Shown: positions 5,028 to 25,813 of the stretch, piece after piece
How the letters are laid out: each line of letters begins with the position of its first letter
How positions within the stretch are numbered: the stretch's first letter is position 1
Source of the DNA: Salpingoeca rosetta
Lineage: Eukaryota > Protista > Choanoflagellata
NCBI GenBank assembly: GCA_033442325.1
Contig: JAWQFM010000014.1
Span: forward strand, 1,074,241 to 1,138,240
Direction: 5' to 3'
Length of the DNA stretch: 64,000 bases
Notes under the pieces: model-generated
Told to the model about the DNA's origin: nothing
Seen by the model: the letters and a program-made list of their open reading frames with translations, nothing else
Database searches by the model: none
Made by a program: the position numbers and the translations under genes

Positions 5028-18751
<13,724 letters not shown>

Positions 18752-18831: not shown

Positions 18832-19065
18832 GTTTACTTATACTTGTTTGGTTGGAGGTATTAAGCTTGCATGAAATCCCAGGACTGGAAAACAAACTTT
18901 GCTTTGCAGCAGCTGCTTGCAACAAGCAAGCAAGCAAGTTAGTGGAAAACAAGGAAGGAAACAAAAGCGGCGGGTGTGGCAGTTGTCATTGTTTTGGTTG
19001 GCTCTCTGCATGTGGCTCTCTGCGTGTGGCACAGCTTTGGTTTTGTTGCGACGAGAGGAAGAGGG

Positions 19066-20893
19066 ATGACTGAGGCCACGCTACGGCTGCTGGCGTCGAC
19101 GACGCTCGTGCTGCTGGCTGTGCTGGTGACAACGACGCCAGCCTCGGTAGCTGCGCGAAGCGTGATTGGCGACATCACACCGGTGTGTTCAGTGACACTG
19201 TGCACTGTGCTGCGTGTGGGTGCTCGCCTTCCTCAGTGTGGAGAGCAGTCCCTCATGCTTGGATGGGTAGATGGGTGGATGGGTGGATGTGGATGGGTGG
19301 GTTGTGCAGTGCCTATGCGTCAGTGAGTGCGGCGTGCGACGTGGTGTGGCTGAAGAGAACAAGTCCTTCATTGCACACTACTGTTGTGATGTACTGTGTG
19401 GTGTGCTGTAAGGGTACAAACTCATCGGCATTATGATCTCCTCCCCTATCCCGTCCCATTCAGGTCGCACGCAACTATGTGCTTGCAAATGAAGAGTTCT
19501 GCCATGGCCAGCTGGTGAGCGTGTTCAAGTTTCCACACCTCTTTGCCCAGATTGGTTACACTTACGGAGGTCAGTCGACTGGCACGCTGCAACGGTGAAC
19601 GGGCTGGTTGGGGGCACAGTGTCGAATGCACGTGCTTCTGTGCTTGACCCTTGGGAGCAATTGCTTGCTGCTGTTGTTGTACCACCAATCTCACTGTGGT
19701 CATTCGTGCTAGTTGGTCTGTGTACTCCTCACCTGCACGTTTCATCACACTCACACTCACATCACATACACTCACACTCACATCACATATACTCACACTC
19801 ACATCACACACACACACACTCACACATAACACTCACTTACACTCACACTCACACACACATCACATACACTCACACACACACATCACACACAACCCACGCA
19901 CTGCGTGCGCGCTTGCTTGTTTGCGCAGGAGATGGTCGCAACTTCTTTCGGCTGCCTGACTTGCGTGGCTCCACAGTGCTGTCTGCAAACGAGACGTCGA
20001 GCATTGGGACCACACGCAATGAGGACGACGCGTCTGCGCTGCTGATGATCAAACACCTTCCCCAGCACAAGACGCTCACCACGCCGCTGCAAGCTGCGGC
20101 GGCCAATGAGCCCACCACGGGCCTGGCAACGTGCACCAGCGCTGACACAGGCTGCGTGGACGTGTATCCCTCCATGCTGGTGGGCAGCAGCACAGAGAAG
20201 ACGGTGAACGGCGTGCGTGCTCCTGGTGTTGCAATGCACTTTGTCGTGTCCACACGCGGCATCTGGCCAACCTCGCCTCAGGACAGCCTGCAAAGCATCA
20301 CCGAAGGCACAGCCCGTCCAGATGAGTGAGTGAGTGAGTGAGTGAAAGTGTGTATGTGTGTGTGTGTCTGCGTGTGTGTCTGTGTCTGCATGTGTGTCTG
20401 TGTCTGCATGTGTTGTGTTGGTTTAATGTGTGCGTGCGTGTGCGTAGCTGTGTGCTGTGTGGCTCTTTTTTCTCCTTTGCCTCCTTCCAACTCAAGAACC
20501 CAAGCGTGGCTGTCATCGCTGTCTTTTTCTTCTTGCTTGGATGTCTCCTTCTCACCACCGCGAACAGGTCAAGCACGAACACCGAACCAGTCGTCATCAG
20601 CTTGGTAAGCCACGTGCTTCCACCATGACAACACATGCCCATTCACATGCTGTGTTGTGGGAGTGGATGCCTTGTGTGAACCAGTGCCACCACGCTCACG
20701 TGTGTTCTGCCCAAAACGTGCCCTGTGTTCCTTCGTTCTTGTCATTCCTATGCCTGGTTGTATCAGAGCACTGCGGATTCCGATCGCCTTGGACACCTTT
20801 CCTTCGCAGATCCCACGCTCGACTTTAACGCGCGCCGCGATATCCCTGCCTCCTTCGCCACATCGACCGGCGTCGAAGGTACCTGTGGTGTCG

Positions 20894-20943
<50 letters not shown>

Positions 20944-22893
20944 TGTGTGTGTGTGTGTGTGTGTTCTTGTTGTGCTCGAGCTTGTGCATTGGGGTTGATA
21001 TATGTGTGCGTATGTGTCGACAGTGCACGTAGTGTGGATGCCACCACTGCATTGGTTTTGCTTATTGCGCAATGTTTGTCCACTTATTCGCACGGTCTGC
21101 ACCAGGATGGTAGTGGCAGCCCCGCCTCCGTGGCCACGGTGGGCAACGGGGAATCATTTTCCGTCATTGGGCCAGGCCTCTTCCTCGCTGCGCACGCCGG
21201 CTTGGCAGACATGGAGACGCACACGCTTGGCGACGTGGCTGCGTTCCCTTTCTCCACCCCGTCTTCCTCTGATTGGCTGCCTTGTGATGGTCGTGCCATG
21301 AACAAGCTGGTGTGTTTGTGTCACGTGATGCGAACAGGACGTTGTCGCTGCTTGCCTTCCAACTTCTCCCATATTTTGAATGCCGCGCTTGTGGTGTTGC
21401 TGTTGCTCACAACCTCCACCCATCTTTTCCGCCTCTTCCCCTTTATCTGATTGCTCATGCTCTGTACAGAGCAATTTGCAACTCTTCACGGTCATTGGGG
21501 ACGCATTTGGCGCCAACTCGACCCACTTCCACCTTCCAAATCTCAATGGCCAGACCATCTACGGCGCACGCACAGACGACAGGTTGGGCGGAGCACATCA
21601 ACTGCCTGTATGCAATTATGTCGCGTTGAATTTCGTGTTGCGTTTGGCGTCGTCCTTTGTACACCGCTGCGCTGTTGTGCGTGTCTCGTATGCGCACTTG
21701 ATTTGTTCTGTGTTTGCCTCCACTGATCATGTGGCTTGATACCCGATGCTTCGCATGGGTCTGTTGAAACCAACACCCGATGCTTTGATGGTCATTCATG
21801 TCAACATCATTGTTAAAAGCAGCCCAAGTTTCGGCTCGCGTGTCTCTGGGATGCCTGCGCTCGGCTGGGATGATGTTCCTGGCTTTTCCGGCAATGCCCT
21901 TCCCAACACCATTGCTCTCAAGACCTGTGGCACCGGACCATCTTGCACAGGTGCATGTGTGTGTGTGCGTGCGTGTATGTGTGTATGTGTGTGTGTGTGT
22001 GTTTGGCAAGGTGTATGCCACTTGCCACCGTCCTGAGTTGCATGGCATCCGATCTCATCGAGGCACACATCACGTATCTACTGCTTGTGTGTTCTGCGCT
22101 GCCTGCCGACTGCCGCAGAATTGCTGAATCCAACAACGAGCACGTTCTCCACGTCTAATGCCGATGCCATTCTGAATCACATTCGGGTGGCCTCGGTGGC
22201 GTTCTACATGTACGCGGCAGGTATGTTGTAACAACCTTCATGTCAAGGCAATCAAGCCTACGCCATGCAGCTTGCCTTGAACATTCTTTCATCCTTTGGT
22301 ACCCAGTGGAGTTACATCACGTGTAACAAGTGGAGCAATATAACAGCAATGTCTTTGCCGGTTTCCGACACCACCTGTGGTTTTGTGCTTGGGGTTGCCT
22401 GCAGGCACGGCGCCATCTCCGAGCCAGTGTGCCGATGGCTTCTATTCCGACGACGTGGATCCCCTCTGCTCCAAGCGTGTGGAGGACATTCTTGGCTTGG
22501 CAGTCGTTAATCAGACGCTCACGCCCGCATTCAGGTCAGAGAGAAGGGGAGGGAGGTGTGTGTGTCTGTGTGTGTCCGTGTGTCTGTGTCTGTGTGTGTG
22601 TGTCTGTGTGTGTGTCTGTGTGTGTGTCGATGTTTGCGTGTATTTGTGGGTATATTCATCTATTCACGGCCATGTTTCGCCCCTCACTCCTCGCTGACCA
22701 TGCTTCAGTCCAAATGTGAGCGAGTATACGGTGTATTTGCCATCCCTGCAAGAGATTGTCACCATCAACGTTCAAGCTCCAGACGGTATGGTACATTAGT
22801 GCTTGTGCTCATGTGTGCTTGGGTGAATGAACGTTGAGTTTGCGTATCGATGCCTTGCGTGTGTGTCTGTGTCTGTGTGGTGGGGTGTGCGTG

Positions 22894-22969
<76 letters not shown>

Positions 22970-23790
22970 TGTGCAGCTGTCATCACTGCCCAAAAGTTGC
23001 TTGTTGCTGACTCAAATCGCCCGGTGTTCTCTTTGCATCCAGGCTCCGGCGTGGAGGGCGATGGTTTGGTTGTCCTACGTGGCGGGCCCCAAGGCGAAAC
23101 AGAGCACACTGTTCGCGTGGTGGCTGGAGCAAACACAGAGTACACATACTCCATCACCTTTATCCAGCCGGTACGCCGCTTCCCTTTTCTTTGTCCTGCT
23201 TGCCCGCAAGCAACTGCGTCAGCTGGAGCGGCAGCTGTCTTGCTTGAGTGTACCAAGTGTGTTTGCTTTCATCAGTACGGGTGCGAGCACGCCTCACTGT
23301 TATTGTTCGATGACTGTGCTGCGCAGTACATTTGTGGCTCCGGAACGGTGAGCGCTGGGGAGCGGTCGCAACCCGTCGCAGTGGAACGAAGCACAATCTC
23401 GGGCGACATGTGAGTGAATGTGTGTGCATGCGTGCGTGCGTGTGTGTGTGTGTGTGTGTGTGTGTTGCCTGCTCCTGCTGGGATCTATGCTGCCATGACT
23501 GCGCTGCTGCTGGCAATGCTGCTCCAAAGCTGTTGTTGGCGGTCGTGGTGGATGTGTGGGCGCCCGCTCCTGATTGTCTTGGGGTTCTCCTGGCAGTGCC
23601 CTCATTATCATCTGTCGCTTGTGTGCTGCCGTGCTTGGACAGCGAGGAGTATTCCAAGAACGCTGACTGCCCGCAAGGCACGATTGGTTCGCTGACAGTC
23701 ACGTGTTCGCCGACATCCCCACAGTGGCGCGTCTCAACAGACACCTGCGCTGTTCCAGGTGTGTGTTTTGTGTGCATGTGTGCATGTGTG

Positions 23791-23869
<79 letters not shown>

Positions 23870-24983
23870 CTGGACAGAAGACTGCGTGTTTGTCTTCATT
23901 CTGATCGAACATCCCCCCCTCCTCCATCCGCCATGCTGCGTCACTATTGCCGTCAGATTGCGTTGGCGGCCGCGTGAAGAGCCGGCGCGTTCGTGTGATG
24001 CTGCCGCCAGGAAACGTTGGCGACACAGCGTACGCAGACTGCCCTGCTGGCTATCGAGGTGCGGGGTAGGGAGGAAGGCGCAAGCAGTCTTAGTCAGGCG
24101 GTGCTGTTGGTGGCGTGCTGTTGATGTGCTCGTGCAACTGTTGATGTGTCTTGCGCTCGTTTTGGTTTCGTTGCCTTTTTGTCTTGTTGACCAGCGGGAT
24201 CAGCTTGCTTGCTCGCTTCCTTGTGTTGCTTGGGGTGCCATGGTTGACCTAGAGCTATGCGAATTGCTTCGTTGGTGCCTGACTGGATGAATATCAACAT
24301 CATGGTCGCATATGTTCACACCGACTCAACTCTTCCACTGCACACAATCCTCCCCCCCCCCAACCCTTTCTCCCTTTTAACACGGCAGGCCGGCTGTCGT
24401 TTGAGTGCCAGCAAGCTCACCAGCGCCGTGCTGCCTACCGCCGCACGAGTGGGCAATGCAGAGGTGAGTGCACGTGCTTGCAGGTACTAGATGGTACACA
24501 GGCGCCGTGCTGGCGTGTGCGAAGACGCAAGTCACATTCACAGCGCACTTGCTTTGGGTTTGTATGCACCCCTGGCTCACATGCACATCTCCACATCACC
24601 CTGTGTCCTCCCCCCCCCCCCTTCACTTGCCTGCATGCGCGCAACTTGTGACCAGGCTGTGCTGCGCATCACCAGGACACCACGGGTGATGCGTGCGAGG
24701 CCGCATGCCAGCGCCAATACAATGCTCCCTCACGCTACACCCTCATTGATGCAAACCCAACAACGGGCTGCAAGGGGCGCTGTGAGTGTTTCCTTCTCCC
24801 TCCATAGCACCTTTGAACTCTGTGTGTGTGTGTGTGTATGTGTGTGTGTGTGTGTGTGTGTATGTGTGTGTTTCCTTTCCTCTCCAACCGTCGTTGACAA
24901 CCCGCACGCGTTTCGTTCTTACAGTGTTGCGTCACATGTTCAATCGCGTGGGAAAGCAGCCACATTGGCATGTTTCCGTCTAA
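19066..24983 (+). CDS. Secreted multi-exon protein: signal peptide, tandem phage tail-collar/MdpB-like units, cadherin-like beta-sandwich and Cys-rich C-terminal modules (3' end uncertain)
   Basis: Signal peptide MTEATLRLLASTTLVLLAVLVTTTPASVAA. Exons 19066-19182, 19464-19569 and 19929-~20325 splice to VIGDITPVARNYVLANEEFCHGQLVSVFKFPHLFAQIGYTYGGDGRNFFRLPDLRG..HLPQH..VRAPGVAMHFVVSTRGIWP, matching the tail-collar consensus GEI..CxGQ..LF..IGxTYGGDG..FxLPDLRG. A second clear collar is LGDVAAFPF..DWLPCDGRAMNKL|SNLQLFTVIGDAFGANSTHFHLPNLNG (~21227-21550). ILGLAVVNQTLTPAFS|PNVSEYTVYLP..VTINVQAPD..YTYSITF is cadherin-like. No transmembrane helix seen. Confidence 0.8.
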
Positions 24984-25095: not shown

Positions 25096-25380
25096 TCATC
25101 TGCGGAGGAGACGGCGGCCAAGCGTGGTGAGCGACATGAGCGTGCGTGCAGCAGGATACACCGTGCGCTGTGCACAGGCGGTGGTGGGGAGGGCACGGGG
25201 CACAGCAGCGACGGCAGCAGCGCACGTGTGCATTGCGCGCTTCTGTGCGTAGTAGCGCCGTTCCAGGCTGTCGACACGATCCAGGAAGAACGTGCCGGGA
25301 AACAGGTTCGTGTCGCGAGACTCGGGCGAAAAGTCAAACCGCGTGTACTCCTGCAGTCGTGGGGTGAGAGCAACATGAGT

Positions 25381-25434
<54 letters not shown>

Positions 25435-25508
25435 AACATATGAGCGACAAACGGTTGCACCCATGGCTGGGCAAGCGACGAACAGACACGCGCACTAACA
25501 GAGACTTA

Positions 25509-25551
<43 letters not shown>

Positions 25552-25573
25552 TGTACGCACCCACACACACCAA

Positions 25574-25656
<83 letters not shown>

Positions 25657-25813
25657 TACCTTGGGAGACGCCGTCGTAGGCCTCAAGGTCTTGCTGGGAG
25701 ACATACATGGAAGGGAAGTAGACGTCCATGGCGACGATGCCCACATCCTGCGGGCGGCCGCCGAGCCACGATGGGACGTGGGTGGCAAAGTTGTTGGTCT
25801 TGCTGGTGTTCAT
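25096..25813 (-). pseudogene. HMGCS: HMG-CoA synthase, only first (25660-25813) and last (25096-25350) exons present; internally deleted copy or assembly collapse
   Basis: Exon 1 RPQDVGIVAMDVYFPSMYVSQQDLEAYDGVSQG is the HMGCS N-terminus; the last exon DFSPESRDTNLFPGTFFLDRVDSLERRYY is the HMGCS C-terminus. The donor is phase 1 and the acceptor phase 0, so direct splicing frameshifts. The catalytic core (ACYG motif) is absent. Confidence 0.75.

What the first reader, a model, noticed from the sequence alone, without database searches (positions are those of the whole stretch)
19066..22220. Domesticated phage tail-collar (MdpB-like) units in a secreted, intron-containing eukaryotic protein, arranged as a possible single-chain trimer
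Seen: after a signal peptide come two clear tail-collar units (19160-20275 and ~21227-22220). Between them is a degenerate unit (~20568-21215) that keeps the second-half features (LG..TL..DIPA, TVGNGESFSVIGPGLFL). The clear units have a parallel TC-x(5-6)-C pair (TCTSADTGC, TCGTGPSC); the middle unit may have TCGVAC, but its splicing is uncertain. Spliceosomal introns interrupt the collar motifs, so this is a nuclear gene and not contamination. Established: the tail-collar domain comes from trimeric phage tail fibres and is widespread in bacterial MdpB-like proteins. From memory, not verified, these often occur as three tandem genes. Inference: horizontal acquisition and fusion into a pseudo-trimeric secreted protein that might bind bacterial surfaces (prey capture or sensing) or the extracellular matrix.
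Basis: partly seen in the sequence, partly recalled or inferred. Interest (0 to 1): 0.85.

Follow-up and report, generated by a model that had tools for sequence, protein, structure and literature searches.

The report
Bacterial tail-collar modules in choanoflagellate protein
A 17-exon nuclear gene of the choanoflagellate Salpingoeca rosetta encodes a secreted protein whose front half descends from a bacterial three-module "phage tail collar" protein; it is a likely old gene transfer that has since decayed and been remodelled, and its function is untested.

Summary
The observation mostly holds. The gene is S. rosetta PTSG_05312. Its 723-aa annotated protein is reproduced exactly from window 19066-24807 by 17 exons and 16 GT-AG introns. 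It has an N-terminal signal peptide and two Pfam Collar domains (PF07484, E 6.7e-29), both split by introns, and it is the only Collar gene in the 55-Mb genome.

The "degenerate middle unit" is not detectable by any statistic. Only its position and the Collar-to-Collar spacing (261 aa) fit a shrunken module.

Relatives were found in only two other eukaryote-like sources, and both share the positions of introns 1 and 2. In contrast, at least 1020 bacterial proteins match a profile of the region, and all 68 sampled have three modules in one chain. So the fusion predates the transfer.

A bacterial representative is predicted to fold as one compact body (pTM 0.83) resembling trimeric phage-fibre receptor-binding domains, with three invariant HxH motifs. 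The choanoflagellate protein keeps 1 of these 6 histidines, lacks the middle Collar, has paired-cysteine loops, and is not confidently modelled (pTM 0.47). A pseudo-trimer is therefore ancestral but unproven here. No read-level RNA evidence could be obtained.

The parts
19066..24807 (+). Whole coding region of S. rosetta PTSG_05312 (723 aa), 17 exons. E1 19066-19182; E2 19464-19569; E3 19929-20325; E4 20568-20604; E5 20767-20871; E6 21106-21309; E7 21470-21582; E8 21823-21950; E9 22119-22220; E10 22405-22534; E11 22709-22785; E12 23043-23170; E13 23327-23409; E14 23643-23758; E15 23957-24058; E16 24389-24463; E17 24656-24807.
   Evidence: These exons reproduce P0001 exactly, and all 16 introns are GT-AG.
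19066..19152 (+). Signal peptide, residues 1 to about 29. It has a hydrophobic core and small residues before the likely cleavage site.
   Evidence: It is the only strongly hydrophobic 19-mer in the protein. The cleavage site follows the -3/-1 rule and was not checked by any tool.
19159..20284 (+). Unit 1, residues 32-193: a complete MdpB-type module made of Collar 1 (residues 35-90), an HxH position reduced to H-K-T, a Cys loop and the tail strand. It is interrupted by introns 1 and 2.
   Evidence: Pfam Collar covers residues 35-90. The bacterial module HMM covers residues 32-193 with E 1e-23. The tail-HMM score is reached by 0 of 500 shuffles.
20129..20155 (+). Cys loop 1, TCTSADTGC (C143, C150).
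   Evidence: Read from the sequence. The second Cys is kept in the Barroeca-like sequence and in L001, and the first in L001.
20285..21192 (+). Middle region, about residues 194-283 (end of E3, E4, E5, start of E6). It sits where module 2 would be, but no significant similarity to a module remains.
   Evidence: All similarity tests were negative. The Collar-to-Collar spacing of 261 aa matches the bacterial C1-C3 spacing of 262-400.
21193..22220 (+). Unit 3, residues 284-436: Collar 3 (about residues 296-352; 21229-21309 and 21470-21559, split by intron 6), an HxH position replaced by F-S-G, Cys loop 2 and a tail-like strand.
   Evidence: Pfam hits on E6 and E7. The module HMM covers residues 293-358. 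BLASTP against unit 1 gives E 4e-6 over 148 residues.
21923..21946 (+). Cys loop 2, TCGTGPSC (C395, C401).
   Evidence: Read from the sequence. It aligns with loop 1.
22515..23155 (+). Cadherin-like beta-sandwich candidate, residues 474-543 (E10 to E12).
   Evidence: PF12733 scores 19.5 bits, E 0.0014, below the 24.2 cut-off. The Atlas structural neighbours are all PF12733 clusters, at TM 0.31-0.43.
23327..24807 (+). Cys-rich C-terminal region, residues 549-723 (12 Cys). It matches no family and has no paralogue in the genome.
   Evidence: No Pfam family. Only self hits in the own genome. It is conserved in P0018.

Best explanation
PTSG_05312 is a genuine nuclear gene of Salpingoeca rosetta. 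It encodes a secreted, cysteine-containing 723-aa protein.

Origin and history (inferred):
- Residues about 30-440 descend from a bacterial MdpB-like protein in which three Collar-HxH-tail modules were already fused in one chain.
- In the bacterial proteins the three modules are predicted to pack around a pseudo-threefold axis, like the three chains of a phage tail-fibre receptor-binding domain, with 3 x HxH forming one metal site.
- The gene entered the lineage leading to S. rosetta and Barroeca monosierra by horizontal transfer and then acquired spliceosomal introns.
- It was then remodelled. The middle Collar decayed beyond recognition. Five of the six metal-binding histidines were lost. 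Each surviving module carries a paired-cysteine loop.
- The region is joined to a cadherin-like beta-sandwich and a Cys-rich tail.

Most likely function (inferred, untested): an extracellular carbohydrate or cell-surface binding protein, acting on bacterial surface glycans or the choanoflagellate's own matrix, using the surviving Collar modules as binding scaffolds.

My odds: foreign bacterial-type origin about 0.8; descent from a three-module chain about 0.6; binding function about 0.3.
For: Gene model:
- The exon model reproduces the annotated protein exactly, with 16 GT-AG introns.
- Collar scores E 6.7e-29. This is the only Collar locus in the genome.

Distribution:
- Searching 1.84 billion representatives with exon 3 gives only 17 hits at E <= 0.001. 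The only close ones are the protein itself, a Barroeca-like sequence and an unnamed metagenome sequence.
- The metagenome contig L001 and the Barroeca-like contig L002 carry introns 1 and 2 at the same positions.
- Exon 2 has dN/dS of about 0.06 against L001.
- No closer kin turned up in JGI metagenome or IMG/VR scans.

Bacterial relatives:
- At least 1020 hits to a profile of the region at E <= 1e-10; most come from metagenomes and the named ones are bacterial. 68 of 68 sampled have three Collars and 64 of 68 have three HxH motifs.
- Both circular permutations occur: tail-first 63, Collar-first 5.
- AF2 of P0014 gives pTM 0.83.
- The top Foldseek rows (all above E 0.001) and nearly all VIA-align matches are trimeric phage fibre domains: T4 gp12, T4 gp37, cyanophage A-1(L).
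- HxH motifs from three chains form an octahedral metal site in such fibres (PMC6116203).

This protein:
- It aligns colinearly with the three-module proteins.
- Its Collar spacing of 261 aa matches the bacterial C1-C3 spacing.
- It has 22 Cys, 4 N-glycosylation sequons and no transmembrane segment beyond the signal peptide.
Against: - The middle module cannot be shown statistically.
- The module tree is unresolved and the choanoflagellate units sit on long branches. No donor can be named, and an internal duplication of one module is not excluded.
- AF2 of residues 30-470 is poor (pLDDT 60, pTM 0.47), and the Atlas's own model is poor too (pTM 0.40).
- No direct RNA read evidence exists for any splice junction. 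The E5 donor is a weak GTCGAA next to a GT repeat.
- There is no functional, localisation or expression datum. The gene ID appears in no searched paper or held supplement.
Confidence: 0.6

Rival explanations
1. This is a two-module protein. The donor, or the early eukaryotic gene, had one or two Collar modules. Units 1 and 3 are lineage-internal duplicates, and the roughly 90 residues between them are an unrelated linker, not a decayed module.
For: - The middle region shows no detectable similarity to any module.
- Units 1 and 3 share Cys loops that the bacterial consensus lacks, and they align with each other.
- The three choanoflagellate units group together in the tree, though with weak support of 56.
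- Two-module bacterial proteins exist (P0005, P0007).
Against: - The Collar spacing of 261 aa lies just outside the bacterial C1-C2 range (124-227) and at the lower edge of the C1-C3 range (262-400).
- The Barroeca protein keeps an LP-containing stretch and a GPGL..AH stretch at the aligned mid and tail positions of module 2.
- Most of the best non-self hits of exon 3 are 450-510-aa proteins with 3 matched stretches; the three scanned or sampled each have three Collars.
Confidence: 0.25
2. The protein is a homotrimer like a phage fibre. Each Collar module trimerises with the same module of two other chains, rather than packing intramolecularly.
For: - The structurally characterised Collar domains sit in homotrimers, such as T4 gp12 (PMC3004832).
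- Only two intact Collars are present, so an intramolecular three-fold ring would be incomplete.
Against: - Its nearest profile relatives are single-chain three-module proteins predicted to be compact monomers.
- There is no coiled coil or fibre shaft in the sequence.
- The HxH axis ligands that hold such trimers together are lost.
Confidence: 0.15
3. The modules came from a virus (a phage carried by prey, or a giant virus of the choanoflagellate) rather than from a bacterial chromosome.
For: - The Collar domain is a phage tail domain. PHROG tail families hit unit 1 at E 5.4e-10.
- 217 phage records match unit 1 by tblastn.
- Some of the nearest Atlas clusters are viral.
Against: - Phage matches are weak: about 26% identity and E 1e-5 or worse among the listed rows.
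- The full module, including the tail strand, matches the cellular three-module profile at E 1e-23.
- No close relative was found in IMG/VR.
Confidence: 0.1
4. It is bacterial contamination or an assembly artefact, not a eukaryotic gene.
For: The domain family is otherwise prokaryotic or viral.
Against: - There are 16 GT-AG introns with eukaryote-style microsatellites.
- The gene sits inside a Mb-scale contig.
- The intron 1 sequence is held at 1.00 by 20 runs from 6 studies.
- Orthologues with the same introns exist in two other sources.
Confidence: 0.01

Closest known systems
Bacterial three-module 'microcystin-dependent protein (MdpB)-like / tail fiber protein' family (3 x PF07484, many with a PEP-CTERM anchor; for example P0009, P0014, P0017)
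   Same: - The Collar domain, and the module order of Collar, then the HxH position, then the tail strand.
- The overall length of the region and the Collar 1 to Collar 3 spacing.
- An N-terminal signal peptide, which the PEP-CTERM members also have.

   Different: - Only 2 Collars are recognisable and only 1 of 6 conserved His is kept.
- Paired-Cys loops replace the Gly-rich loop.
- There are 16 introns.
- It is fused to a cadherin-like and a Cys-rich region, and has no PEP-CTERM.
- It keeps 42 of 81 highly conserved columns.
- It is not confidently foldable.

Phage T4 short tail fibre gp12 receptor-binding domain (PDB 1OCY, 5IV5) and related fibre tips (T4 gp37 2XGF, cyanophage A-1(L) 8KEC)
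   Same: The Collar sequence motif matches (E 0.02). The bacterial relative's model matches these chains at Z 5.6-6.2 and Foldseek probability 0.99-1.0. The HxH metal motif is shared by the bacterial relatives.
   Different: The phage proteins are homotrimers of three chains with long shafts and a baseplate attachment. This protein is one chain, without a shaft and without HxH. Phage sequence matches are only about 26% identical.
Other candidate bacterial-to-choanoflagellate transfers in S. rosetta (Matriano et al. 2021, PMC7971027)
   Same: The gene is intron-bearing and embedded in the genome, is related to extracellular functions, and is restricted to part of the choanoflagellates. The paper describes the same pattern for many of its 175 candidates.
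   Different: PTSG_05312 is not in the held part of their tables, which do list the neighbours PTSG_05303 and PTSG_05324. No paper in the library links a tail collar domain to choanoflagellates.

Membership tests
Pfam Collar (PF07484) | Whole-protein score above the gathering cut-off of 24 bits | tested here: met
   100.1 bits, E 6.7e-29, with two stretches. The single exons E2 and E7 each pass alone.
MdpB-type module (Collar + HxH + tail strand) | Full-length match to a module profile, tail strand included | tested here: met
   Unit 1 covers HMM positions 3-140 of 146, E 1e-23, and its tail score is reached by 0 of 500 shuffles. In unit 3 only the Collar matches the profile. The rest of unit 3 is supported only by its alignment to unit 1.
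MdpB-type module (Collar + HxH + tail strand) | Conserved HxH motif after the Collar | tested here: not met
   These columns are 97-100% His in 68 bacterial proteins. S. rosetta has H-K-T in unit 1, a gap in the middle and F-S-G in unit 3.
Single-chain three-module (pseudo-trimer) proteins | Three recognisable Collar domains in one chain | tested here: not met
   Two are found in S. rosetta against three in 68 of 68 bacterial proteins. Nothing is detected in the middle region.
Single-chain three-module (pseudo-trimer) proteins | Spacing and colinearity of first and last Collar | tested here: met
   The spacing is 261 aa, against a bacterial C1-C3 range of 262-400 (median 283.5) and a C1-C2 range of 124-227. 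The alignments are colinear.
Single-chain three-module (pseudo-trimer) proteins | Modules packed into one compact body | tested here: inconclusive
   Bacterial P0014 gives pTM 0.83. The S. rosetta fragment gives pTM 0.47 and pLDDT 60.
Phage tail fibre (T4 gp12-like) | Homotrimeric fibre with a shaft and virion attachment | not testable with these tools
   No shaft repeats or other phage domains were found by Pfam. The oligomeric state is unknown.
Cadherin-like beta sandwich (PF12733) | Score above the gathering cut-off of 24.2 bits | tested here: inconclusive
   19.5 bits, E 0.0014, over profile positions 5-84 of 89. The structural neighbours are all PF12733 clusters, but at TM 0.31-0.43.
Horizontally acquired gene | Patchy eukaryotic distribution with relatives otherwise bacterial or viral | tested here: met
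   Three eukaryote-like sources against at least 1020 profile hits that are bacterial wherever named. The nearest Atlas clusters with recorded taxa are bacterial or viral. A supported tree naming a donor was not obtained.

The most novel reading that the evidence does not exclude
A close unicellular relative of animals has kept, under purifying selection, a remodelled bacterial or phage-type receptor-binding module. In it, disulfide loops replace the metal site and two of the three collars are retained. The cell secretes it to recognise bacterial surface glycans, for prey capture or for sensing the bacteria that steer its life cycle. This would be a eukaryotic re-use of phage-style host-recognition hardware.
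Probability: 0.15. Interest if true: 0.8.

Novelty: new variant of a known kind. Interest (0 to 1): 0.45.

Why it matters
S. rosetta is the main model for how bacteria steer choanoflagellate feeding, mating and colony formation, and genetic tools exist for it. A secreted protein built from bacterial or phage-type surface-recognition modules is an obvious candidate for a bacteria-facing or matrix protein, and no searched paper discusses it.

Two further points:
- It is a clean example of how a transferred gene is naturalised. It gained introns inside the conserved motif, lost a metal site, gained disulfides and was fused to other extracellular domains.
- The by-product may interest structural biologists. 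It is a large bacterial family whose three modules occur in both circular permutations and carry exactly three HxH motifs.

The domain itself is already flagged by automatic annotation (UniProt F2UA27), so the find is incremental rather than a surprise.

Tried and rejected
- Indirect RNA evidence only. Runs X4-X11 hold 0.35-0.41 of the words of 19000-22600, near the exonic fraction of 0.40. They are not among the holders of intron 1, although three RNA places in that list stayed unfilled. This is suggestive, not proof.
- The module tree of 207 modules left the choanoflagellate units on long branches with weak support, so no donor and no module-by-position orthology could be shown.
- AF2 of S. 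rosetta residues 30-470 with a 70-row alignment was confident only in the two Collars. Its Foldseek rows at high rmsd are meaningless.
- The word-index search with residues 30-470 returned only the protein itself because the candidate list was saturated.
- Two metagenome scans and one IMG/VR scan found no further relatives.
- Gene-ID searches in papers and in the supplements of PMC7971027 and PMC4054682 found nothing. At least one of the supplement files was cut when stored.
- My longer version of E12 (acceptor at 22978) and the TCGVAC-including ends of E5 were set aside. The Barroeca orthologue agrees with the annotated E12. The E5 donor remains open.
- Complex prediction was not run. The single-chain model was already unconfident, and a 'no support' result would carry no weight.
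- NCBIfam has no family for these proteins apart from PEP-CTERM in P0009.
Full report
**What is there.** The window is eukaryotic: GC is about 55%, microsatellite-rich introns are present, and the source is a 55.4-Mb genome in 68 contigs.

- Reading the region by eye gave an exon chain starting at the ATG at 19066.
- A search of 1.84 billion representative proteins with the largest exon (19931-20323) returned a 723-aa protein, P0001, at 100% identity.
- The cluster look-up names it hypothetical protein PTSG_05312 of Salpingoeca rosetta. Its accessions are XP_004993884 and UniProt F2UA27, which is auto-named "Phage tail collar domain-containing protein".
- A script that threads P0001 through the window reproduces it exactly with 17 exons (19066-24807) and 16 introns, all GT-AG.

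**Check of the observation.**

- Pfam Collar (PF07484) hits single exons above or near its cut-off: E2 24.2 bits, E7 26.1 bits, E6 17.3 bits, and the start of E3 12.2 bits.
- It hits the spliced protein at 100.1 bits, E 6.7e-29, in two stretches.
- Collar 1 is cut by introns 1 and 2, and Collar 3 by intron 6.
- These are the only Collar matches in the whole genome.
- A profile of the full bacterial module (Collar, HxH region, tail strand) covers unit 1 from residue 32 to 193 (E 1e-23). In unit 3 it covers the Collar only.
- Unit 1 and unit 3 align with each other over 148 residues (E 4e-6). The alignment includes the two TC-x-C loops and the tail strands, so unit 3 is also a whole module.
- The N-terminus holds the only strongly hydrophobic segment. 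The protein has 22 cysteines and four N-glycosylation sequons, which fits a secreted protein.

- Residues about 194-283 have no Pfam match even at E 10.
- They have no module-HMM domain at domE 100 with filters off.
- Their best tail-profile score is reached by 52 of 500 shuffles.
- They have no BLASTP similarity to unit 1's second half.
- What speaks for a decayed module is position only. In multiple alignments with bacterial three-module proteins the region falls on module 2.
- The distance between the two Collar starts is 261 aa. That sits at the lower edge of the bacterial Collar 1-Collar 3 range (262-400, median 283.5) and outside the Collar 1-Collar 2 range (124-227).
- The TCGVAC motif lies after the annotated E5 donor (20871/20872, a weak GTCGAA) and is not in the annotated protein. 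Alternative in-frame donors at 20889 and 20895 exist next to a GT repeat and could not be tested.

**Splicing evidence.** The support for splicing is therefore indirect.

- The published gene set was refined with RNA-seq, and 98% of genes have transcript support overall (PMC4054682).
- Eight runs from two studies hold 0.35-0.41 of the sampled words of 19000-22600. Exons make up 0.40 of those bases.
- Those runs are not listed among the holders of intron 1, although places reserved for RNA runs stayed empty.
- The metagenome contig L001 and contig L002 carry the homologous exons. L002 encodes P0002, which shares a 90%-identity cluster with a Barroeca monosierra protein.
- Both contigs have introns at the same two positions inside Collar 1: after ..PV, and within the codon after ..YG.
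- Exon 2 differs from L001 at 20% of bases but only 4 of 35 residues. dN is 0.089 and dS 1.4, so the ratio is about 0.06, a sign of strong purifying selection.

**Distribution and origin.**

- Exon 3 found only 17 proteins at E <= 0.001. Three are close: the protein itself, P0002 (the Barroeca-like cluster, which contains the 686-aa EukProt protein P0018) and P0003 (the metagenome sequence).
- P0018 is colinear with P0001 through the middle region, Collar 3, the cadherin-like part and the Cys-rich tail. Its N-terminus is truncated in the gene model, but L002 shows that the missing exons exist.
- Two scans of JGI metagenome contigs and one of IMG/VR found nothing closer.
- All nearest ESM Atlas clusters with recorded taxa are bacterial or viral.
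- A profile of the region recovers at least 1020 proteins at E <= 1e-10. Most are 450-510 aa and come from metagenomes. Sources call them microcystin-dependent protein or tail fiber protein, and many carry a PEP-CTERM anchor.
- The records that name an organism are bacterial (Accumulibacter, Burkholderiales, Planctomycetes, Phycisphaeraceae, Verrucomicrobiota).
- Phage proteins match only weakly, at about 26% identity and E 1e-5 or worse among the listed rows.
- This pattern supports horizontal acquisition by an ancestor of S. rosetta and Barroeca, followed by intron gain.
- A tree of 207 modules did not resolve the donor. The choanoflagellate units sit on long branches.

**The single-chain trimer idea.**

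- All 68 sampled bacterial proteins have exactly three Collars.
- 64 of the 68 have exactly three HxH motifs, in columns that are 97-100% His.
- They occur in two circular permutations: tail-Collar x3 (63, of which 51 end in a PEP-CTERM-like anchor by a pattern match) and Collar-tail x3 (5). Tolerance of circular permutation is what a closed ring of three equivalent modules predicts. This is my inference.
- AF2 of P0014 gives pTM 0.83, with only three variable loops and the C-terminal end disordered.
- The top Foldseek rows, and seven of the eight VIA-align matches among 48,161 chains, are receptor-binding domains of phage or phage-like tail fibres (T4 gp12, T4 gp37, cyanophage A-1(L), Pa223, a Photorhabdus injection-system fibre). 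No Foldseek row reached E 0.001.
- In such fibres, HxH motifs from three chains build one octahedral metal site on the threefold axis (PMC6116203).
- In one metagenome contig a 166-aa one-module gene sits directly before a 341-aa two-module gene, again three modules in all.
- So a pseudo-trimer is well supported, by prediction, for the bacterial relatives, and the fusion happened in bacteria.

**What the choanoflagellate protein kept and lost.** S. rosetta keeps 42 of 81 highly conserved columns. It has two Collars, only His121 of the six histidines, and Cys-pair loops where bacteria have a Gly-rich loop. AF2 with a 70-row alignment gives pLDDT 60 and pTM 0.47, confident only in the Collars. 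The Atlas's own model is no better. Whether the remodelled protein still closes a three-fold ring is open.

**The rest of the protein.**

- Residues 474-543 give a sub-threshold Cadherin-like (PF12733) match, and their structural neighbours all belong to that family.
- Residues 549-723 are Cys-rich and match no family. They have no paralogue in the genome but are conserved in Barroeca.
- There is no transmembrane segment or hydrophobic C-terminus.

**Function.** Nothing was measured. The family's characterised relatives are phage fibre tips that bind cell-surface molecules, and the bacterial relatives are secreted, surface-anchored proteins. The choanoflagellate protein is secreted, disulfide-rich and joined to an adhesion-type beta-sandwich. 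The most likely role is extracellular binding of a carbohydrate or cell surface, either bacterial or the cell's own matrix. I put this at about 0.3.

**Literature.** The gene is absent from the held HGT tables of Matriano et al. 2021, from the stage-specific lists of Fairclough et al. 2013, and from all searched full texts.

**Verdict.** This is a real, intron-bearing, conserved choanoflagellate gene of bacterial-type ancestry. It is a remodelled, partly decayed eukaryotic variant of a known bacterial three-module family.

Noticed in passing
window 25252-25813, minus strand: Just downstream of the gene, an exon encodes the first 45 aa of HMG-CoA synthase (25813-25679; PF01154 positions 1-25). 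About 300 bp of CA/GT repeat follow, and then an exon encodes only the extreme C-terminus (25371-25252; PF08540 positions 240-275 of 280). Exon-level searches of the whole genome with both families find only these two pieces. About 390 codons seem to be missing. This could be a real deletion, an assembly collapse at the repeat, or a miss by the search.
   Followed up: partly
window 19183-24655 (introns of the gene, outside 19846-19887): Most of the gene's introns carry a long (GT)n or (CA)n tract, for example around 20340-20400, 20895-20965, 21955-22005, 22555-22625, 22860-22965, 23410-23465, 23760-23870 and downstream at 24825-24870. Three annotated donors (E1, E6, E14) read GTGTGT. Such tracts offer a ladder of alternative in-frame donors every 6 bases.
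   Followed up: no
L002:161-670 (contig encoding P0002, which clusters with a Barroeca monosierra protein): The EukProt model P0018 starts inside exon 3. The contig carries the missing upstream exons: a signal-peptide-like start ending ..IGDVYPV, and an exon ..VFKYPHLFAQIGFSYGG. The first Collar is therefore intact in that organism and its published model is N-terminally truncated.
   Followed up: yes
P0008-P0139 (bacterial proteins): The bacterial three-module Collar proteins occur in two circular permutations: tail-first in 63 of 68 (51 of those end in a PEP-CTERM-like anchor by a pattern match) and Collar-first in 5 of 68 (the two read, P0014 and P0017, have no signal peptide). Nearly all have exactly three HxH motifs. 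No solved structure of this family was found by sequence.
   Followed up: partly
window 19464-19569 compared with 19929-20325: Constraint within unit 1 is very uneven. Exon 2 (the Collar core) is 31 of 35 residues identical to the metagenome relative L001, while exon 3 is only about 40% identical.
   Followed up: partly
window 17096-18751, plus strand: Upstream lies a 551-codon open frame made largely of homopolymer runs (poly-Q, poly-D, poly-G, poly-K). It is probably a low-complexity exon of the neighbouring gene.
   Followed up: no
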